A DNA stretch of 64,000 nucleotides from Klebsormidium nitens (GCA_000708835.1 DF237176.1:1-64000); one strand, 5' to 3'. Positions 1 through 22,970 are shown, counted from the stretch's first letter. The notes: generated by a model not told the origin, from the letters alone. Program-made: numbers and translations.

Positions 1-3000
1 TTCAATGGATTCAAATGCATTACATCAGAAGGGACTCAGCCATACAATCCCCCAGTCTGCTGCGGCCCAGGCACGACCAACTGTGGGGGCGAGTGCTGCG
101 ACTCCGTGTTACCAGAGAGTTCCCAGATCTGTGTATTTGACCCAGCCCAGCCAGCAAATGAACCCCCAAGATGCTGTCAATATGGACAGAGCAATTGTGG
201 TGGCCAATGCTGTGACGCAGGCACTACTTGTACCATTGACAATTCCCAGGGATACCCACTCCCGTATTCTGTCCTCAAGGGGCAAGCATTTGTGGGGGCG
301 AGTGTTGTGACGTGGCCAACGGGTACCACTGTTTAAGCACTGGCACACCTGGGGACGCCTCAGTGTGTTGTTTTGGACAGCTAGGGGATCCACCTCCACC
401 TCCGATTCTATGTGGGGGGAAATGCTGCTATCCCGCATTTGGTTATACGTGTTCTGGTGATGCCATCTCAGGAACCTGCTGTGAGCCGGATACTTCTCTT
501 ACAAACGAAGGCGTGTGCTGCCCAAGTGGGGCTACAGCTTGTGGGCAGAGAGCGTGCTGCAGTGCCGAGTATGGGGAGGTTCGCAATGAGGCCGGCGGTT
601 TTTGCTGTCCGTCATTTGCTATAGTGTGTGGGAAAACTTGCTGCGACTTAGCATTTGGTACAAGTCAAGAAAGGACCTGCTTAGGGGACCCCTTGTCGCC
701 TTCGGCACAATGCTGCAAAAGCGGCGTGAGTCTGTGTGGGGGCCGCTGCTGTGATGCCGCTCTTGGCTTCAGCTGCTTGGCGGTTGGGTCCACCGAGCTT
801 TGTTGTTATGGGGACACTGCGCCCATCTGTGGAGGCATGTGCTGCACCGGAACCTGTATGGGGGATGCTGAGGAAGGGAGGTGCTGCTACGGGGCCACTG
901 GCAGTAATCAGCTCTGTTTGAGTAAGTGCTACTTCCTTCTCCCTTTCGGTCGGTGTTTTGAGTTACCATATCCGGAGCCTCGACTTTGAGCTTAACTTGA
1001 CTAGACATCTTGGTGCTTTTGATAAGATTGACATGTTGGGATGCAGCTCTTGCCTATTCGTCGTCCTTGGCTAGCTGAATCATAGAGTCAGCGTTTTGGC
1101 GTTCTTTGATTTACAGTGACACGATCTCATTTCGTCATGAGCCAGTAGTATGTGGATACAGAAGGGAATGCTCGTGCCTCCTCGCAGCGGGAGCTGATAT
1201 CGATGCATGCCGTATTCTTGGCAGACCTGAGTGCTGGACATAACTTTCAGCTCTTGCCCTGAAGAGTAAAGATTAAAGGCAAGACTCGAGCAGAAAGCAT
1301 GTCTGGCGTGCATCGAGGAGCTGACTTCGGCTTCTGGATGGAGTACTGTACGTGGATGCAATCAAGGTGCTAGTCGTGTATGTCCAGTACAAATAAGCCC
1401 AAACTGAACCTTCGAGAATGATGAGACACCTTGGCGCGCTCTTGCAATGTCTCCTAGAGCACGCTGGCACTCCTCTAGGTCAAAGACACTTATGATCATG
1501 GGTCTTGCGTTGCAGACTGCTTGGGAACTTGAGCTGACGCCGTTTTTGAGTACCTCTGCAGGTGGCTCTGGCCATGGAGACCCACATTTTGAGCTAAGAG
1601 GATTCCCAGATGGCAAAGTCCTGGAGTGGGACTTCCATGGTAGACATAATCTATGCTACTGCATGCTCTCCGATACAAGACTGGCGGTGAGCAGCTATCA
1701 TATGAATCTTCCCATTACTCCTTGTTCAAGCTTTTGAAGACGAGTATCTTCCGAGCAAGTGTCTAACCCTACACAACTTCAGCGATCTGTTGGCACATTT
1801 GTCCTGTTACGGTATACGTAACCCCGTCTTGTATTCGCCGCATGCAATTATGTCTTAGGTGACCTTATCAAGTACAAAAGGCACTGGCTGCATTTTGACG
1901 AGTTCATGTGTCTGCCACAAAAGCCATCTGTTGGGAACCTTAAGGTCCGTTAGCTTGACTTAGATTACTGGTAGTCTGGCTGGAAAAGATCTTAGCGTCA
2001 GCTAAAAAAATCAGCGTCAGCTGGCCTAAAAAGATCATGAGCTGCGCACCAGCTTGTAAGTTCTTGCCCTCTTCTTGAAGGCTTCCGACCAGTCTTGCCG
2101 TCTCTTTCGAAGAGGCCTGGAGGGCTCGGTCTTTTCTGATGTAACCAAGCTCGATGCGTCTCGAAGTCGTTTGTTATCCTGGATGGTCGCTTGAAAATTT
2201 CCTCTGCCTTTGTTAGCGAGGAGTCTTCCAATGAACGCTATCTCAACCAGGACCGCGGCAACGGATCGAACCACGTAGGTAAATGCCTTTCTGAAGCTGG
2301 CACAATCCCACTCTAGCGACGATCAATCTTGTGATGACCATCGACTCTTTTTCCGCAGCTGACGGTCCACATGTTCTCCTTGGCACCGGACGCCCGCATC
2401 TTGGAGCGTCCGGAAGACGACGGGCTCAACTTCTTCGAACGCACGTGGATGGACAGACTAGGGATAATGTACATCAACGAGAGGGGAGAGGAAAAGAGCA
2501 TTGCTGTCGTCCTCAACACCGATCTGGACCGCGCTGGAAAGCCGCCCTTTGACGTCACCTTCCAGGGGGAGAACATCACTGCCGCTATCAACGTGAGTAA
2601 AGTGGCGACATAATGCTCTAGATCAGCGCGGCATAATGCGCAGCTTGGAGGCATAACTTAATGCGACGGCGTTGTGTAGTTGGACCGTTTTCGGAGCGGA
2701 GAAACTTGTGGATTCACATCCTCGTGGATTGACTACAAACACCTATTGTTTTTTAAATCTTCGAACGAGCTAGTGCAGTGGTTCCAGTGGCACTAGATTC
2801 CACCAAACGGCTCTGGAAGCTGCAATTTGGATAATCAAACTGCCATGAAGCAGTTAATGACGTTATCTGTGAGTCTCTTCTAATAGGCCTCTATCCCAAA
2901 AGTCGAGCGAGCTTTCCCTCCCGCTTCTTTTATAATATTCGTTCCTATATCCGTCTTCGACTTGGTCCAGCTTAATTCCGCCATGATCATCTGCTCACCG

Positions 3001-4494
3001 TCCACCCGCGAATGACGTTAGCAAGCGCACAGCCAAGCAAATTAAAAGAAATAGTACTCTTCCAATCCGGACAGCCTTTGAGAACAGAGCGGATTTCCAA
3101 CTAAAGCAAACCTCCTGCAGGGCCTCGGTTCTAACTGGACAAGCCCCGACGGAACTTCCTGGATCCGCTGTTCCGCTGACCGCGTCAACGCCTTGTCCGT
3201 TTCCGTGGCCGGACTCTTGGAGATGGAGATCGTGAGCGACGTGGAGAAGGACCTGATCGCGGATCCGCCCGTCCACTTCCTCAACTTCGAAATCAAGGCC
3301 ATCGCCAATACTGCAAACGTGCACGGGGTAATTTGAACTCCGCTCTATATCCTGAGAAAAAGATGCTCCCTGCTTACAATCTGCTTACTTCGCCTCTAGC
3401 TAAGAATGATCGGCATGCCTCGAGGAGCGCGACTGACGGCAGAGCATTCCGTCAAGCTTTTTCTATGCTCATCAGTGGTTGACTCAGCAGACTGTGTGAG
3501 GCCGGACGGCTCAGAGGCAGCTGATCCTTCTTGTTAAACACGCGGCTTTGACGCACCTCCCTCGAAGTCTACCAGGCAGCGTGCAGGTCCCTTTGACGTT
3601 TATTGGGCAGCGCGCCACGTGACTAAGCTCTTCAGTCAGCCGCAATCAATTGGCCATTCGAAACTGTACCGGGAGCTGATCAAAGCCGCCTAATTTGCCA
3701 CCGCGCAGAAACATTAGTAACCAGAAAGTTGCGTCCCACATGATCAGGTCGACTAAGGGACGACCACACGTGGCGGAGGTGAACCGTGGTGGAATTGCTC
3801 ACTCGTACATTTATCCCCCTCCCTAGTTTTTGAGCCAGATGTACGCCCCCGGCCCGGTCGAGGAGCGGCTAGCGATGGGCACGCTTGAGGGGCTCCGCCA
3901 CCGCGAGTACGTTGAGGGCACCGATGACGACTACCTCACCTCGGGCCTGACGTCAGCGGACTGCGGCTTCAGCCGCTTTGGCCAGGTGCGGACACGTGTC
4001 GCCATGCGCTCCGTTCCGGAACGGAGGACAGGCCTGCAGACGGAGAGGCCTCGCTTTGCTTCTGAGCGAAGCACTTTGCTTGTCGCTCTGTTGAGCCCGT
4101 TATATGCAGGGTCGAATTTTGCGCCAGTCAGCAATACTTTTCAACGATACACTAGACGCACTGCCTGCCTTTTTGGGACGCGTAAAAATTAAACACCGTC
4201 CCGTCAAACAGCTTTTCGTCCCTGAGTCTAAGGCCCCAAGCTGCACTACCAGGTCGTTTCCTTCTCGCTCCCACAGGCGTTCCATACTGACGTCATTTTC
4301 CGACGTAATGGTTGATTCTGTGATTCTGCGACTGATTCTGTACATCTCTCATGCAGATGCTGGAGAACTTGGTGGTCGATGCTCTTGGTTCCAGCCGCCG
4401 TCTCTTCTCTGCGAGCGGACAAGAGCTTACGGTCACAGAGTCGACGGTTTGCCGCCTCGTTGGAAAAGGTAGAAACTCGTTTGTGTGTATGTAA
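1..4494 (+). pseudogene. Cys-rich repeat / DPHF-root-cap domain secreted protein, copy A; 5' end outside the window, one frameshift at ~240-268
   Basis: Exons <1-921, 1562-1686, 2359-2592, 3121-3327, 3827-3985, 4357-4494. All introns are GT-AG and phases are consistent (1,0,0,0,0). Internal exon lengths (125/234/207/159) and the last exon (138) match copy B exactly. Frame +1 reads Cys modules from base 1 (FNGFKCITSEG...CGGQCCDAGTTCTIDNSQG), then the modules continue in frame +3 (TPVFCPQGASICGGECC...). Motifs: GDPHF, TWMDRLGI, VHGFLSQ, EGTDDDYLTSGL..DCGFSRF. The frameshift could be an assembly error. Confidence 0.75.
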
Positions 4495-14863: not shown

Positions 14864-17800
14864 ATGGCGCCCTCGAGACTGCAGAGCACATCAGCTGGCA
14901 AGTATGCCGTCACGGGTATCAACGCCGTTTTTGGCGTGTGCCTCTTCTTCAGCCTCATGCGCAGCTGCGCGGGCGAATCAGCGGGCCTTCCTAAAGTGGT
15001 GAATATCCAATGCGCTGCAAGCGAATGTGCCGCAGGTGTATGCTCGTTTGAGGGTGCTTGCTGCGATTCTGGTGAAAATCCAACTCTGTGCGGGGGGGAG
15101 TGCTGCTATCTTGGCAATTCTGCCAATCAGCATTATGGTTATGGCAAAAAGTGCTTTGGGGATGCTGAGGCAGGATTGTGCTGCGATGTCAATTCCAATT
15201 CAGTGGATTACCCAACTGTCATCTGCGGAGGACAATGTTGTAGCTCTGGCAAGTGTTTTGGCGATGCATCTGTAGGCGTCTGCTGCTTTGATGGTGCCAC
15301 GGAGATTTGTGGAAATGGGAATTGCTGTGGTTTTCCCTATTTTGAAGTGACTGCCAGCTGTGTTGACGACGCCGCCCAGCCAAATAAGCCCTCAGTATGT
15401 TGTCTACCGGGCGGGACCATGTGTGGCAGCGGGTGCTGTAACACTTCTGATGGAGACGGTTGCGAATCAGACGGAATGCAGCCAAATGATCCCCCAATCT
15501 GCTGTTCGCAATACCAGACCAACTGTGGGGGCCAGTGCTGTGACAGGACGTACTCTTGTGTCATTGACACTGCCCATCCAAATCAAACCCCGGTTTGCTG
15601 TCCTCAAGCTGGCGCGAGCATATGTGGCGGCGAGTGTTGTGACACAGCCAATGGGTTCTCCTGTGTAAGCACACCTGGGGACGCCTCAGCTGCTTCTGGT
15701 GTATGTTGTTATGGAGAGCTGGGCGATTCCACACCTCCGATTCTTTGTGGGGGTCGATGCTGCTCCCCTGCATATGGTCAAGTGTGTTTTGGTGATGCTA
15801 TCACAGGAACCTGCTGTCCGCAAGATTCTTATCTTACAATCGAAGGCGAGTGCTGCCCAATTGGGACGGTTCTGTGTGGAGGTCGTTGCTGCGATGAGAG
15901 CACTGACTCACAATTCCAATGCCTTGGCAATGCAACCTTTGGGAGCTGCTGCTATAAGTCTCCCGCAGAAGAGTCATCTCAAATCCTATGCGGGGGGCAA
16001 TGTTGCCACACTGGTCCATATGAAGGTGGATATGCAGCCGACCTCTGCATTGGAGATGCACTTGAGGGGGTATGCTGCCGAAGCGCAGCCGGGAGAACTG
16101 ATATAGTCAATTGTGGGGGTACCTGCTGCGGAAAAGATGCTTGCGCTGGCAATGCAACAGTGGGACTCTGCTGCTACTGGGACCCATCCAGCGTATGTGG
16201 GGCAGACTGCTGTGACACCGTGAATGGCTACAATTGCGTGCAAGGTTCATCCAGCGTTGAACTGTGCTGTTACGGGAGCCAGAGCACCGTGTGCAGTGGC
16301 AGGTGCTGTGATGCTGCTCTTGGCTTCAACTGCTTGACGGACGGGTCTGCAGAGCTTTGCTGTTATGGGGACACTGCGACCATCTGTGGAGGCCTGTGCT
16401 GCACCGGAATCTGTATGGGAGATGCTGAGAAAGGAAAGTGCTGCTACGGGGCCTCTGACATCAACCAGCACTGTTTGAGTAAGTGCTTCTTTCTGCCTTT
16501 CAGTTGCTGCTTTGAGTCAATGTATCCGGCATGTCCACTTTAAGCTGAACTTGACTAGACACTTTTGTCTCCTTCAATAAGATTCAATCTAGTGAGATTC
16601 ATGATCAGCTCTTGCCTGCTTAGAACATGCTTCTTTCGCTGAATAATAGAGTCACCTTTTCATGACTTTCTTTGAGAAACAATGATACAATCTCATTCGT
16701 CATGAGCCAAAAGTCTGTGGAAAGAGGAGGGGATGCTCGAGCCCCCTCGCTGTGGGAGCTGATGCATGCCGTATCCTTGGCAAACACAAGGGTTGCACAT
16801 GTTCGTTCAGCTCTTGCCCTTTTCAAATTAATGACAAGACTTGAGAAGAAATCCTGTCTGCTTTGCTTTAAGGAGCTCAGGTTTTGGATCGATTACTATA
16901 CATAGATGCAATCAAAGTGCTAGTCCTGTTTGTCGGGCACAATGAAGCCCATGCTGAAGCTTTGAGGATAATGATACACCTTGGCGCACTCTTGCAAAGC
17001 AGGAGAACTCCTTTTCAAAGACCTTTTCAAAGACACAAACAGACATGGCTCGCGTGTGGGGACTGCTTGGGAAGTTGAGCTGACGTCGTTTCTGACAACC
17101 TCTGCAGGTGCTTCTGGACGTGAAGACCCACACTTTCAGCTCAAGGGATTCCCGGATGGCAAAGTCCTGGAGTGGGACTTCCACGGTAGACATGATCTGT
17201 GCTACTGCATGCTCTCCGATACAAAACTTGCGGTGAGCAGCTATCATAATTAGTCAGAAGGTTTCCAGTTCAGCTTGTTCAAGCTTTTTGGCCGAGCAAG
17301 TGTCTAGCCGTACACAACGTCAGCAAGCCGTCGGCAGGTCTGTCCAATACTGTAACTCTGTCTGGTATTCACCGACAGCGAAGATTAACGCATCAGTGAC
17401 CCTAATAAATCAAAGAAGGCACTAGCTAGGCTACTGCCAATGGAACGTGGAGGAAAGCGTCGTCAACTGGAAGAAGATGAAGTGCGCTTTAGTATGTAAG
17501 TTCCTGCCCTTTCCTCGAGGGCTTTGTATATCATTGGAGTGCATCCCTTAAGTTCTACGCTTCTTATACTTGAAGCAAGCCTGGAGCCCGCCTGGAGGGC
17601 TCTTGTCTGACGTCATCAATCTCGATGCTTGTCGAAGTCTTCTGTTGCTCTAGATGGTCGCTTCGAAAATTCCTCTGAAGCTTTTGTAGCGACGAGTGTT
17701 CAACTATTTAACATCACATCAGTCAGGACTGCGGAAAATGGATCGAACCTTGTAGGTGAATGCCTTTTTGAAGCTGGCAGAAACGCACGTTAGCGACGAT

Positions 17801-20211
17801 CGATCTTGCGCTGAACATCGACTTTTTCTCCGCAGCTAACGGTCCACATGTTTTCCCTGGCACCGGACGCCCGCATCCTGGAGCGTCCGGAAGACGACGG
17901 GCTCAACTTCTTCGAGGGCACGTGGATGGACAGACTAGGGATTATGTACATCGACGAAAGGGGAGAGGAAAAGAGCATTGCTGTCGTTCTCAACTCCGAT
18001 CTGGACCGCGCTGGAAAGCCGCCCTTTGACGTCACCTTCCAGGGGGATGACATCACTGCTGCTGTCAGCGTAAGTGAAGTGGCGACATAAGCGGCCAAAG
18101 TGGCAGTATCAAGGCTAGAAAAAGGAACCTTAGCCGGTCTTGCGTTCAGATATCCGGCCATCCCACTGGCATGACTTCGTGCATATGCGATTCTGAAACT
18201 GGGAACTGACGTCGGTTCAATCAACTTTAAACGTTTGGAATGCCTTTGCCTGTGATGGCAGCTCAACTTGTCGGTTGCTCTTGAAGCTTTTCGGGGAGCC
18301 CGGTGAGTTTCTTTTCTATCACACGCGTTTTGCTCAGGGTTTCCTTTTGCTTTTTACGTTCCATTCCGTACATCCATTATTCTGGTTCCGTTCGGATTTG
18401 TCTCAACTAGACCTGACTTCCTTCAGCAACTGGCAGAACGACGTCAGCAAAATAAGAGATTATTCAATTCAAAGAGCAAAAGTCACTCCAAAACTTGAGC
18501 CTCAAAACGGCCTTCTGAATCTGCAAACCTCTGATTTTGCAGGCCCTCGGATCTGATTGGACAAGCCCCGACGGCACGTCCCGGATCCGCTGTTCCGCCG
18601 ACCGCGTCAACGCCCTTTCCGTTTCCGTTGCCGGACTCCTGGAGATGGAGATCGTGAGCGACGTGGAGAAGGAACTGATCGCGAATCCGCCCGTCCACTT
18701 CCTCAACTTTGAAATCAAGGCCATCGCCAACACGGCAAATGTGCACGGGGTAAGGGACTAAATGACCGCTTCAGTTCCTCATTTTGATGACGACGTCTCT
18801 GCACGCATGATGACGCGGATCCCACTTTTGGTTGTTTGAGCTGAATCAACTGGTTACTACCTGAGTATGTCCTTCCTTCTTGCTTGACGCTCATGCCGTT
18901 AGTCACTTCCCTTGAGTAGCTTGACCGACAGCTGACGATGAAGCAGCGCCGTCAGGTCTCGAACGACGCAATATGTTGAGTTGCTTTACTTTACTCTTGA
19001 ATTTGCTGCGCTCTCAAGATAGCGGTTCGTGTGCACTTCGACGGCCCCGCCTTAGCTGAATCTTCCCAAAGAAACTCGGTGGCCTTCGGCCCACGTCTTT
19101 GATTGCAGCCAACATGACAGTCAGCCTATTTGCGATCATCTTGACGTGATCGCCGCGGCTGAGCCGACGACCCGAGTCTGCTAGAAATTCTGATGGCCAC
19201 AGATGCTAATCACTTTACTTTTAGCAAAATCGATCTCCCGTGGCAAAGGGTGAATCTCTGCCGGCAGGATCCCCTTGTAACCCCTCTAAACTCGGATGTT
19301 TCTCTCCCTCTCCTAGTTCCTGCCTAGGCTGGGCCAGATGTACGCCTTATGACCCCGGAGAGAAATCTCTCTCTTTGTAGTTTCTTGATGGCGACGACAA
19401 AGTCTTTTCTCCCTTTCCTCGTTCCTGGGCCAGATGTACGCCCCCGGAGACAAACTTCTCGAGTCTCGTAATCCCTTGTTCACTAAAATAACTTCTTTTC
19501 CTCCCCTAGTTCCTGGGCCAAATGTACGCCCCTGGAGCGCTCGAGGAGCGGCTGGCGATGGGCACCCTGGAGGGGCTCCGCCACCGCGAGTACGTTGAGG
19601 GCACCGATGACGACTACCTCACCTCGGGCCTGACGTCAGCGGACTGCGGCTTCAGCCGCTTCGGCCAGGTGCGGACACATGTCGCCATGCGCTCCCCTAT
19701 ATCTCGGACGGAGCTCTACAGAAATATTGCACACGCGGGCTCGCCTTGCTTGTCCCGGCTTCATGAGCGAACCCCTTTTGCTTGACGCTGCCTCATTCTT
19801 GCACGACCGTACTCCCGTTAATATAACGTGGGACGTTTTTCCCCGTGCCCGAGAACCGGGGGTCAAAACCGCGGCACCCATCGTACGTGAGGAATGTGCC
19901 TCCCCAAAAGAGCATGCAGTAGGACTTTGCTTCTCGCAGCTCCCCCTCTCCCCAACCAGAGCGTTCTCCATACCGTCCTCGACTCCGTTTAGTATAATGT
20001 TAGTCGTGTCTCATTCGCGCTCAAAAGAGAAGTCTTCTCTCGACTAAACAGCACTTTTCTTTTCATCTTTCAGGTGCCGGAAAACCTGGTGGTCGATACA
20101 GTTGGATCCCCCCGCCGTCTCTTCTCGATGGGCGACCACGACATTCCCGCCACAAAGTCGACGCTTTGCCGCCTCGTTGGAAAGGGTAGAAACTCGTTCG
20201 TGTGTATGTAG
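14864..20211 (+). CDS. Secreted Cys-rich repeat / DPHF-root-cap (PF06830-like, LEA-related/root cap family) protein, copy B, 825 aa
   Basis: Exons 14864-16478, 17108-17232, 17836-18069, 18543-18749, 19510-19668, 20074-20211 sum to 2478 nt; GT-AG introns, open frame. N-terminal hydrophobic signal-like segment (AVFGVCLFFSLMRSCAG). 88 Cys in the 538 aa of exon 1, arranged as 13 CC-C-CC-C modules. Then EDPHF...DFHG...CYCMLSD...TWMDRLGI...VHGFLGQMY...EGTDDDYLTSGLTSADCGFSRF and a two-Cys tail, matching plant root-cap family motifs (GDPRF / HGVLGQ / TSGLF..DC..SRF) as recalled. Confidence 0.88.
19290..19460 (+). repeat. Two decayed tandem copies of the intron-4 acceptor plus the start of exon 5 of copy B
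   Basis: cctAG|ttcctgcctaggctgggccagatgtacgcc (starts 19317) and cctcg|ttcctgggccagatgtacgcccccggag (starts 19422, AG lost), versus the functional cctAG|ttcctgggccaaatgtacgcccctggag (19510). Confidence 0.9.
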
Positions 20212-21490: not shown

Positions 21491-22970
21491 AAACCCCTCG
21501 ACGGAACCTTTCAAATCCGCTGTTCCGCTGATCGCGTCAACGCCCCGTCCGTTTCCATTGCCGGACTCCTGGAGGTGGAGGTCGTGAGCGACGTGGAAAA
21601 GGCCGGAGCTGATCGCGGATCCGCCCGTCCATTTCCTCAACTTCGAGATTAAGGCCATCGCTACCACAGCGAACTTGCACGGGGTATTTAATTAGGTTTA
21701 AGTTAGGGACTCTGCTCAGGAACCAACAAAGGAAGTTTTCGCAGCTAACCAGGCTGGAATCCATACTTAAGTCTCAGCTTGCTTATTGGACAAATAGCCG
21801 GTAATTAAACTTGGCTCCAAGGCTGGTTACCGGCCAAGCCTGCCTAGTGGGAGGATGAATATACACTTTTCAAACAGCCCATAGCATCCAAGGTAAACGG
21901 CGCCGAGGATTTCTATGCAAAGGGGCCATCCCTACTCGAAAGCTCAGAACCCTTCCAAACCCTCCCGGTTTTGGCTTGGCGACCGATTCGTGCGCGATCC
22001 GAAGCTGCTGCCGGAGATCCTTGCGGGCAAAACCGTCTCTGCATAACTCCATGATGCTACTCGTCACGTGGATACAACTCGTGCGTGTTCGAACCGCAAA
22101 CCGGTTGCGACGTTATACCCGTAATCTGCTCCGCTCGTTTTCTTGCCGCGATCGACCTCCCTCCCACTTCTTCGGCGGAGCGTGAGAAGTGGTGAAGCAT
22201 TTCCTTCAGGATTTTGTCGTGTTCTAGCCTACAGCAGATGGGGCACCCCGCGGCCAGCCGTGGCGCCTGTTCATTTCTAAGAAATCCAAGCCTAAAACCT
22301 TCATGAATGTGGGACGTAGCTGAGCTTAGACCGTTTGATAAGCAGCGGACCAGATCTGGCAGTCTAAAGAAAGATTAGCCTCAGGTTGATTGCAATCAAT
22401 TTGGCGGGCCAGACTCTAATCTTTGAGTTGATCCAAACTGCCACGGTTCTCGCTGCTCAAACTGGTCAATCAACCGTTTGTATGTTAGATCAAACCACGA
22501 AAGGCCGAGGGAAAACCACCGACGAGGCGGTTGACAGTGGACTCACCCAAAAACCCGCTCTACACTCCAATGCTTTTGAGTTCCTGTTCAATCAAACAAA
22601 TTCCTTACCGAACAGGTTCCGTTCTCTTCTAGTTCCTGGGCCAGATGTACGCCCCCGGAGCGATTGAGAGCGGCTGGCGATGGGCACATGGAGGGTCTCC
22701 GCCACCGCGAGTACGTACGGCGAAGGCACCGATGACTACTACCTTACCCCGGCCTGACGCCCTCCTGACGTCAGCGGATTGCGGCTTCAACCCCTTCCGA
22801 GGCCAGGTGCGGCCGAACGACTGTCACCAAACACCGAGCTTTACTGTCATCAGATTTTGGTTTCATAAAGCACAAAGATGCGAACGGATCAGGGGCCTTA
22901 CTTGTCCGGGCTTTATGAGAAAACCCTTTCGTTTGACGCGCTGCCTCATTCTAGCACGGCCGTGAAAGGA
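21491..22970 (+). pseudogene. Fragment of a third root-cap-domain gene copy (C): decayed exon 4 (~21491-21683), exon 5 (22633-22806) and part of intron 5
   Basis: Exon 4 remnant IRCSADRVNAPSVSIAGLLEVEVVSDVEK has a 4-nt insertion (gccg) before ELIADPPVHFLNFEIK. Exon 5 remnant FLGQMYAPGAIE... has several indels. ~22890-22960 matches copy B intron 5 (~19740-19810). Exons 1-3 and 6 not found. Confidence 0.85.

What the first reader, a model, noticed from the sequence alone, without database searches (positions are those of the whole stretch)
14864..20211. Candidate self-cleaving, glycan-anchoring system: a 13-module Cys array fused through DPHF to an ITIH-like root-cap domain
Seen: a signal-like N-terminus and 538 aa containing 88 Cys, then immediately xDPHF (EDPHF here, GDPHF in copy A) opening a ~245-aa domain with TWMDRLGI, NALSVSV, HFLNFEI, NVHGFLGQ and VEGTDDDYLT. 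Known: Asp-Pro bonds in GDPH motifs of VWD proteins (MUC2, FCGBP) cleave autocatalytically. In inter-alpha-trypsin inhibitor heavy chains (ITI_HC_C) cleavage at D|PHFII leaves the Asp esterified to a glycosaminoglycan. From recall, the ITIH C-domain has the same ordered landmarks (DPHF, TYFGRLGI, NLVVSV, DFLGFYV, THGLLGQ, IDGAYTDY). Inference: the plant root-cap domain is an ITIH-like autoprocessing module, and this alga may use it to cut off a large disulfide-rich array and possibly link it covalently to wall or mucilage polysaccharide (adhesion or protective coat). The Cys-array plus root-cap architecture is not one I recognise from land plants.
Basis: partly seen in the sequence, partly recalled or inferred. 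Interest (0 to 1): 0.88.

Follow-up and report, generated by a model that had tools for sequence, protein, structure and literature searches.

The report
Algal cysteine array with self-cleaving-type domain
This Klebsormidium gene encodes a secreted protein with 13 cysteine-rich modules joined to a plant "root-cap" domain, which turns out to be a relative of the animal mucin/VWF D domain and carries that domain's self-cleavage motif at the same structural spot, giving a large plant protein family of unknown function a testable mechanism.

Summary
Window 14864-20211 (+) is a six-exon gene with GT-AG introns. It encodes 825 aa: a signal-like N-terminus, 13 six-Cys modules (538 aa, 88 Cys), then EDPHF opening a ~280-aa C-terminal domain. 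The window is Klebsormidium nitens scaffold DF237176.1. The public model (KFL_002270040) starts at an internal Met and omits the array.

The C-domain belongs to the streptophyte "DPH/root-cap" family (PF06830), described in 2024 as a beta-sandwich of unknown function. An AlphaFold model (pLDDT 84) matches only VWD domains (Z 9.6-14.6; next fold 5.2). Its Pro29 aligns with the first residue of the cleaved chains of FCGBP D10 and RGMB. Across 108 family members DPH is intact in 88. Twenty members give collinear Pfam hits to VWD and 21 to ITI_HC_C, nearly all below threshold.

So homology to GDPH-type autoprocessing domains is well supported. Cleavage at D545|P546 is inferred, not shown. Native AnIBP ran at full-length size, which counts against it. 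ITIH-like transfer to a glycan is speculation. The family fuses many different extracellular heads to this C-terminal domain. Two other first-stage notes in this genome report similar genes.

The parts
14864..16478 (+). Exon 1. It encodes the start codon, a signal-like N-terminus (about residues 1-37), a 5-Cys cap and 13 six-Cys modules (residues about 70-538). The donor is A|GTAAGT, phase 1.
15071..16477 (+). The 13 modules, with consensus x6-C-G-G-x-C-C-x(3-12)-C-x-G-D/N-A-x-x-G-x-C-C. They match no Pfam family or PDB sequence.
17108..17232 (+). Exon 2. It encodes predicted strand beta-1 (SASGR), the E-D-P-H-F motif (D 17125-17127, P 17128-17130, H 17131-17133) and strand beta-2 through WDFHG and CYCMLSD.
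17836..18069 (+). Exon 3: sandwich strands, including TWMDRLGI.
18543..18749 (+). Exon 4: sandwich strands (NALSVSV, HFLNFEI), ending in NVHG.
19510..19668 (+). Exon 5: FLGQ...VEGTDDDYLT...DCGFSRFGQ. This is the part that the 57-position Pfam Root_cap model matches (23.6 bits, below the cut-off of 27).
20074..20211 (+). Exon 6: a low-confidence C-terminal tail with RRL and two Cys, followed by the stop codon.
1..4494 (+). Copy A, a tandem paralog cut by the start of the scaffold. It has Cys modules, GDPHF at 1579 and the same exon set. The annotated model KFL_002270010 covers only its last 241 aa.
21500..22818 (+). Copy C, a decayed remnant. It retains exon-4-like and exon-5-like pieces with frame changes and a stop, and no DPH exon was found.

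Best explanation
The locus encodes an 825-aa secreted protein. Its N-terminal part is a signal peptide followed by 13 disulfide-rich six-Cys modules found so far only in Klebsormidium. Its C-terminal 280 aa form a DPH/root-cap domain, which is a divergent VWD-fold beta-sandwich.

The Asp-Pro-His motif sits in the hairpin between the first two strands. This is the position where FCGBP, mucin and RGM VWD domains, and by published prediction the ITIH C-domains, cut themselves.

The most likely mechanism runs as follows. In the late secretory pathway or the acidic apoplast, the Asp545 side chain attacks its own backbone carbonyl and breaks the D545-P546 bond. This leaves the Cys array ending in ...GRED and a C-fragment starting PHFQLK. 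The two fragments would initially be held together by strand beta-1. The domain would thus act as a C-terminal processing or deposition module for a variable extracellular head.

Shown here: the gene model, family membership, the VWD fold, the register of the motif and its conservation. Inferred: the cleavage itself and what happens to the fragments afterwards.
For: Gene model: the last 308 aa equal KFL_002270040, and the paralog KFL_001820080 (892 aa) carries the array and the GDPHY domain in one annotated protein.

Family: a profile of the K. nitens domains finds 303 representatives, including Mesostigma, Closterium, fern and lycophyte proteins. Root_cap hits occur in 106 of 108 members.

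Fold: the AF2 model has pLDDT 84 and pTM 0.81, with D28-P29-H30 between strands 22-26 and 30-34. Foldseek top hits are all VWD proteins, E 1.7e-5. An unbiased VIA-align search of 48,161 chains gives ranks 1-19 all VWD-type (VWF D2 at Z 14.6, rmsd 2.6 over 160 residues), and the next fold scores Z 5.2.

Register: the cleaved chains FCGBP D10 8qci_B (starting at 4081), FCGBP 8r0t_B (1259) and RGMB (169) all align from model residue 29, which is the Pro.

Sequence: the family profile hits only FCGBP in the PDB (E 4.4e-11), pairing sDPhfvgadGtkFdFnGe with GDPHYVTFDGRRFDFMGT. Pfam gives VWD in 20 of 108 members, one at 24.7 bits above the 22.9 cut-off, and ITI_HC_C in 21 of 108.

Conservation: D in 96, P in 101 and H in 90 of 108 members, against a mean column identity of 18%. 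The triplet is either intact (DPH 88, DPR 7) or fully decayed.

Published chemistry: in FCGBP D10, D-to-A/N and H-to-N mutations abolish cleavage (PMC10880436). ITIH3/5/6 have GDPH between the first two strands of a VWD-like sandwich (same paper).

Architecture: the domain lies within 60 aa of the C-terminus in 102 of 115 proteins. The heads in front of it include LRR, subtilase, multicopper oxidase, RTX repeats and C-type lectin.
Against: No cleavage has been shown for any member of this family.

The ice-affinity-purified Ancylonema protein (DUF3494 plus this domain) gave a 2D-gel spot of about 55 kDa, the uncleaved size. The spot was identified only by mass and pI (PMC10796529).

Gene B has Glu, not Gly, before the Asp, whereas the cis Gly-Asp bond is thought to favour attack in FCGBP (PMC10880436). 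Across the family this position is S, G, D or N in 79 of 108 members.

Some land-plant members have DPR or have lost D-P, so the family's core function may not need cleavage.

The window protein itself gives no Pfam VWD or ITI_HC_C hit.

Confidence: 0.55

Rival explanations
1. The VWD-like domain does not cleave. It acts as a wall-binding, adhesive or oligomerising beta-sandwich that simply tethers variable heads, and DPH is kept for structural reasons in the beta-1/beta-2 turn.
For: Native AnIBP ran at full-length size (PMC10796529). Many animal VWD domains function without cleavage. Angiosperm members have DPR, and some lineages have lost D-P. Gene B has E instead of G before the Asp.
Against: D-P-H is among the most conserved columns of a family with 18% mean identity. 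It occupies exactly the site that is cleaved in FCGBP and RGMB. According to the papers read (PMC8267560, PMC10880436), GDPH motifs examined in VWD domains are cleaved.
Confidence: 0.3
2. ITIH-like cleave-and-transfer. The anhydride formed on Asp545 is captured by a sugar hydroxyl, esterifying the Cys array to a wall or mucilage polysaccharide, and the C-domain is discarded as a propeptide.
For: The layout matches ITIH: a large head, D|PHF, and the domain at the extreme C-terminus. ITI_HC_C profile hits occur in 21 of 108 members. Most members have only two Cys after the cut site (columns 55 and 256, present in 99 and 97 of 108), so no disulfide would hold the fragments together. There is a published precedent of ITIH Asp esterified to chondroitin sulfate (PMC8267560). 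The heads are wall-type proteins, including chimeric extensins in poplar and Arabidopsis (PMC5073881).
Against: There is no evidence of any protein-glycan ester in this family. In FCGBP the anhydride is simply hydrolysed (PMC8267560). No acceptor glycan or helper factor is known in algae. This model also requires cleavage, which is itself unproven.
Confidence: 0.1
3. The public annotation is right. Translation starts at the Met at 16415, and the upstream Cys-array ORF is not part of the product.
For: The deposited CDS starts at 16415, and no gene is annotated over 14864-16414.
Against: The annotated start lies in-frame inside an ORF that is open for 517 further codons and begins with a signal-like sequence. 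The short model would lack a signal peptide for a disulfide-bonded extracellular fold. The paralog KFL_001820080 is annotated with the array and the domain in one protein. Copy A has the same layout.
Confidence: 0.05

Closest known systems
DPH domain / root cap proteins (Pfam PF06830 Root_cap; Prochazkova, Remias, Nedbalova and Raymond 2024, PMC10796529; Raymond 2024 bioRxiv 10.1101/2024.01.29.577848)
   Same: A ~280-aa C-terminal domain that starts with DPH and consists of a beta-sandwich followed by the root-cap motif. It is restricted to streptophytes and preceded by a signal peptide and a variable N-terminal region. The window protein is a member.
   Different: Those papers report no known function and do not link the domain to VWD, ITIH or Asp-Pro cleavage. 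Typical heads are about 100 aa, whereas here the head is a 500-aa array of 13 six-Cys modules.
VWD domains with a GDPH autocleavage site (FCGBP, MUC2, MUC5AC, RGMa/b/c; PF00094)
   Same: The same fold (Z up to 14.6). The motif pattern DPH[FY]-x3-DG-x2-F-D-F-x-G is shared. The D-P sits in the beta-1/beta-2 hairpin, in exact register with the cleaved FCGBP D10 and RGMB chains.
   Different: There are no C8, TIL or E modules after the domain. A root-cap helical segment follows instead. Gly before the Asp is not conserved. Most members lack the Cys pair that would bridge the two fragments. The window protein does not reach any Pfam VWD score.
[quoted passage not shown]
   Same: A large head, then D|PHF, then a domain at the extreme C-terminus. 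Collinear profile matches below threshold cover positions 20-160 of 189. The ITIH domain is reported to have VWD-like topology with GDPH between its first two strands (PMC10880436).
   Different: The head has no VIT or VWA domains. No glycosaminoglycan acceptor is known. A direct profile-profile or structural comparison with ITIH could not be run here.

Membership tests
DPH / root-cap family (PF06830) | Match to the Pfam Root_cap model at or above its gathering score (27 bits) | tested here: not met
   P0003 scores 23.6 bits, E 5.8e-5. Of the 16 K. nitens paralogs scanned on their own, all match the model at E 10 or better but the best reaches only E 1e-5, and only one of the 17 listed carries a precomputed PF06830 annotation. 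The 57-position model covers only the tail of the domain.
DPH / root-cap family (PF06830) | Full-length (~245 aa) similarity to family members from other streptophyte lineages | tested here: met
   A profile of the K. nitens domains finds Mesostigma, Closterium, fern and lycophyte proteins over profile positions about 3-245, with E 1e-10 to 1e-33. 106 of 108 aligned members hit Root_cap.
DPH / root-cap family (PF06830) | The domain begins with DPH, lies at the C-terminus, and follows a signal peptide and a variable head | tested here: met
   EDPHF at residue 545 of 825. The tail after the domain is 60 aa or less in 102 of 115 proteins. The signal peptide was judged by eye only.
VWD domain (PF00094) | Pfam VWD profile match | tested here: not met
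   The window protein gives no hit at E up to 10. Twenty of 108 family members hit the profile below threshold, and one (P0086) scores 24.7 bits against a cut-off of 22.9.
VWD domain (PF00094) | VWD beta-sandwich fold | tested here: met
   Z 14.6, rmsd 2.6 A over 160 residues against VWF D2. Ranks 1-19 of 48,161 chains are all VWD-type, and the next fold scores Z 5.2. This uses a predicted model, not a solved structure.
VWD domain (PF00094) | G-D-P-H in the hairpin between strands 1 and 2 | tested here: met
   D28-P29-H30 lie between strands 22-26 and 30-34. Pro29 aligns with the first residue of the cleaved FCGBP and RGMB chains. Gly is replaced by Glu in gene B and kept in copy A.
VWD domain (PF00094) | Disulfide linking the fragment before GDPH to the rest of the domain | tested here: inconclusive
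   Most members have only Cys 55 and Cys 256 after the cut site. Four of the seven DPR members have a Cys within three residues upstream of the Asp plus an extra Cys at column 191. Gene B has 6 Cys after the site and 86 before it in the mature chain.
VWD domain (PF00094) | Followed by C8-TIL-E modules, as in mucins and VWF | tested here: not met
   No such Pfam domains were found, and only about 45 aa follow the domain.
ITI_HC_C (PF06668) | Pfam ITI_HC_C profile match | tested here: not met
   The window protein gives no hit. Twenty-one of 108 family members hit the profile, the best at 24.4 bits against a cut-off of 27, covering profile positions 20-160 of 189.
ITI_HC_C (PF06668) | D|PHF at the start of a propeptide-like domain at the extreme C-terminus of a secreted precursor | tested here: met
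ITI_HC_C (PF06668) | Cleavage with transfer of the new C-terminal Asp to a glycan hydroxyl | not testable with these tools
   This needs protein chemistry.
ITI_HC_C (PF06668) | VIT and VWA domains in the head | tested here: not met
   No Pfam family matches the 538-aa head.

The most novel reading that the evidence does not exclude
The streptophyte DPH/root-cap domain is a general C-terminal autoprocessing and ligation module. It would cut at Asp-Pro and esterify whatever extracellular head precedes it to a cell-wall or mucilage polysaccharide. Heads seen so far are Cys arrays, extensin repeats, LRRs, laccase-like oxidases, lectins and an ice-binding domain. This would be a plant counterpart of ITIH-chondroitin coupling.
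Probability: 0.1. Interest if true: 0.95.

Novelty: new variant of a known kind. Interest (0 to 1): 0.68.

Why it matters
Root-cap/DPH proteins number about 2,000 in streptophytes, with dozens per genome in grasses and Closterium. [quoted passage not shown]

Placing the domain in the VWD / ITIH-C fold group gives the family a concrete hypothesis that can be tested by mutation: Asp-Pro autoprocessing of a variable extracellular head. The self-cleavage motif is conserved at the exact cleaved position. The full-text searches run here found no paper linking root-cap proteins to GDPH or VWD.

The result also extends a domain type best known from animal proteins (mucins, VWF, RGM, vitellogenin) to the green lineage. 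In addition, it corrects two truncated gene models in the K. nitens reference annotation.

Tried and rejected
1. A single-sequence PDB search with the domain gave only designed "Pizza" propeller proteins. These hits are built from repeated 3-bit fragments and are spurious.

2. The Cys array has no Pfam hit at E up to 10. PDB sequence searches gave only a weak FANCL RING match (E 0.024, composition-driven) and nothing for the module profile. An AF2 model of one module, built with 39 stacked modules, reached only pLDDT 54.6, so no fold search was run on it. A granulin-like hairpin stack remains an untested guess.

3. An alignment of three-module windows was aligned by MAFFT by position along the array rather than in register, so I dropped it.

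4. Tandem Repeats Finder found no DNA repeat in exon 1.

5. I could not obtain any ITIH sequence. The representative search lists only its best 150 hits, all of which looked like DPH-family proteins and not ITIH. The word-indexed search would need several shared 5-mers and a matching length. I left the third homologous-protein search unused rather than spend it on a low-odds query. The ITIH link therefore rests on Pfam HMM hits and on the literature.

6. Searches for papers naming the gene ids, or combining GDPH or VWD with "root cap", found nothing.

7. No model coordinates are returned, so the Asp geometry and the disulfide partners were not examined.
Full report
**What is there.** The window is positions 1-64000 of Klebsormidium nitens scaffold DF237176.1 (GCA_000708835.1). 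The deposited protein KFL_002270040 (P0003, 308 aa) maps to it at identical coordinates starting at 16415. The ORF listing shows a 559-codon ORF from 14864.

Reading the splice sites and checking against P0003 gives six exons: 14864-16478, 17108-17232, 17836-18069, 18543-18749, 19510-19668 and 20074-20211. All introns are GT-AG. The product is 825 aa, and its last 308 aa are identical to P0003.

The public model starts at an internal Met inside exon 1 and omits 517 upstream in-frame codons, including the signal-like N-terminus. No other gene is annotated there. The long model is supported by the paralog KFL_001820080 (P0001, 892 aa), which is annotated with the same array, GDPHY and the same domain in one chain.

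**The array.** The first 538 aa hold 88 Cys. The gaps between successive Cys repeat as (x, 3, 0, n, m, 0), and there are 13 C-x3/4-CC anchors. Stacking 39 modules from gene B, copy A, P0001 and a JGI relative gives the consensus C-G-G-x-C-C ... C-x-G-D/N-A-x-x-G-x-C-C, with four invariant Cys columns.

There is no DNA tandem repeat, no Pfam family at E up to 10 and no meaningful PDB sequence match. The only relatives found are Klebsormidium proteins. The array is 40% identical between paralogs, whereas the C-domain is about 83% identical. An AF2 model of a single module was unusable (pLDDT 54.6), so the module's fold is unknown.

**The C-terminal domain is a DPH/root-cap family member.** K. 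nitens has at least 16 paralogs. A profile of them finds 303 representatives at E 0.001 or better. Those I looked up come from Mesostigma, Closterium, a fern and a lycophyte. Pfam's Root_cap model covers only the last 57 positions. It hits 106 of 108 aligned members, but the window protein scores only 23.6 bits, below the cut-off of 27.

The literature already names this ~280-aa unit the "DPH domain". It is described as a beta-sandwich plus root-cap motif, restricted to streptophytes, with more than 2,000 proteins. It starts with DPH in algae and DPR in grasses, follows a variable N-terminal region, and has no known function (PMC10796529; bioRxiv 10.1101/2024.01.29.577848).

**It has a VWD fold.** With a 108-sequence alignment, AlphaFold2 gives pLDDT 84 and pTM 0.81 for P0003. 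D28-P29-H30 lie between strands 22-26 and 30-34.

- Foldseek against the PDB returns only VWD-containing proteins at the top: MUC2, VWF, MUC5B, MUC5AC and RGMB, with E from 1.7e-5.
- VIA-align re-scoring gives VWF D2 at Z 14.6 (rmsd 2.6 A, 160 residues), MUC5AC and MUC2 D2 at Z 14.4-14.5, and RGMB at Z 10.9.
- A Foldseek-independent search of 48,161 representative chains puts VWD-type proteins at ranks 1-19 (Z 9.6-14.6), including vitellogenin and Cypridina luciferase. The next fold scores Z 5.2.

**The motif is in register with experimentally cleaved sites.** Three deposited chains begin at the Pro left by GD|PH cleavage: FCGBP D10 8qci_B (residue 4081), FCGBP 8r0t_B (1259) and RGMB (169). 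All three align from model residue 29, the Pro of D28-P29.

At sequence level, the family profile hits only FCGBP in the whole PDB (E 4.4e-11). It repeatedly pairs sDPhfvgadGtkFdFnGe with GDPHYVTFDGRRFDFMGT.

I scanned all 108 members against Pfam at E up to 10. The only recurring families besides Root_cap are ITI_HC_C (21 members, best E 2.5e-5) and VWD (20 members, best E 3.2e-5).

The matches are long and collinear. VWD covers profile positions 2-128 of 156, starting at the DPH. ITI_HC_C covers positions 20-160 of 189 and runs into the VHG-x-LGQ region. One Mesostigma member passes Pfam's own VWD cut-off (24.7 against 22.9 bits). The best ITI_HC_C score is 24.4 against 27. The window protein itself hits neither profile.

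Independently, Yeshaya et al. report that ITIH3/5/6 have GDPH between the first two strands of a predicted sandwich with VWD topology (PMC10880436). I could not obtain ITIH sequences for a direct profile-profile test.

**Conservation argues for function.** In an alignment with 18% mean column identity, D is present in 96, P in 101 and H in 90 of 108 members. The triplet is DPH in 88 and DPR in 7. In the rest it is mostly fully decayed. This intact-or-decayed pattern is what one would expect of a functional motif lost in some subfamilies.

The residue equivalent to FCGBP Q4094, which hydrogen-bonds the Asp, is N, H, Q, S or T in 90 of 108 members. In FCGBP D10, D-to-A/N and H-to-N mutations abolish cleavage (PMC10880436).

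**Architecture.** The domain ends within 60 aa of the C-terminus in 102 of 115 proteins. The region before it has a median length of 171 aa and reaches 1,809 aa. In Mesostigma the heads are LRRs, subtilase plus LRR, multicopper oxidase, RTX repeats and a C-type lectin. In Ancylonema the head is a DUF3494 ice-binding domain. In poplar and Arabidopsis there are chimeric extensins. Other K. nitens paralogs carry different CC-rich heads.

Most members have just two Cys after the cut site, at columns 55 and 256, so no disulfide would hold the fragments together. Four of the seven DPR members have a Cys just upstream of the Asp plus an extra Cys at column 191, which could form a VWD-style bridge.

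**Evidence against cleavage.** Cleavage has not been shown for any family member. Ice-affinity-purified native AnIBP gave a spot of about 55 kDa, equal to the uncleaved mass, although it was identified only by mass and pI. Gene B has Glu where VWD domains have Gly. Some land-plant members have DPR or have lost D-P altogether.

Nothing supports glycan esterification beyond the analogy with ITIH. In FCGBP the anhydride is simply hydrolysed (PMC8267560).

**Verdict.**
- Homology of the root-cap/DPH domain to the GDPH-type VWD / ITIH-C group is well supported. As far as the searched literature shows, it is unreported.
- Self-cleavage at D545|P546 is the best-supported mechanism, at roughly even odds.
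- Covalent glycan anchoring is a low-probability, high-value extension.
- Two other unchecked first-stage notes in this genome describe similar Root_cap/VWD-like genes with GDPH.

Noticed in passing
window 14864-16414: The reference annotation of KFL_002270040 starts at an internal Met (16415). It omits 517 in-frame upstream codons that encode the signal-like N-terminus and most of the Cys array. No gene is annotated over this stretch.
   Followed up: yes
window 1-971 (copy A array), frame change near 264-290: Copy A is cut by the start of the scaffold. Its Cys-array reading frame shifts once (frame 0 to frame 2), and one CC doublet reads FC. This is either a real frameshift or an assembly error. 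The annotated model KFL_002270010 covers only the last 241 aa.
   Followed up: partly
window 21500-22818: A third, unannotated tandem copy has been reduced to exon-4-like and exon-5-like pieces with frame changes and a stop. It is a pseudogene remnant.
   Followed up: partly
P0025 (KFL_004230010), P0006/P0007, P0010, P0020 (other K. nitens scaffolds): Other paralogs join the same DPH domain to different Cys-rich heads. One example is a 590-aa array of CCPG-type modules in P0025. Cys-rich heads therefore seem to have been swapped or invented repeatedly in this alga.
   Followed up: partly
P0044, P0081, P0130, P0073, P0066 (Mesostigma viride): Proteins of 850-2,016 aa carry the DPH domain at the extreme C-terminus. 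The heads are plant-type LRRs, subtilase plus LRR, three-domain multicopper oxidase, RTX calcium-binding repeats or a C-type lectin.
   Followed up: partly
alignment A3, columns for P0003 residues 26-30 and 191: Members with DPR, or with a decayed motif ending in R, tend to have an extra Cys at column 191. The DPR members often also have a Cys within three residues before the Asp. This may be a VWD-like bridge between fragments that the DPH-type members lack.
   Followed up: partly
window 15071-16477: Two modules of gene B carry an N-A-T sequon at the G-D/N-A-x position, and two further sequons (NTS, NQT) lie elsewhere in the array. The array may therefore be N-glycosylated.
   Followed up: no
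window about 29357 onward (+): The record annotates a 3,145-aa BEACH/PH-BEACH/WD40 protein gene starting here. It is unrelated to the finding.
   Followed up: no
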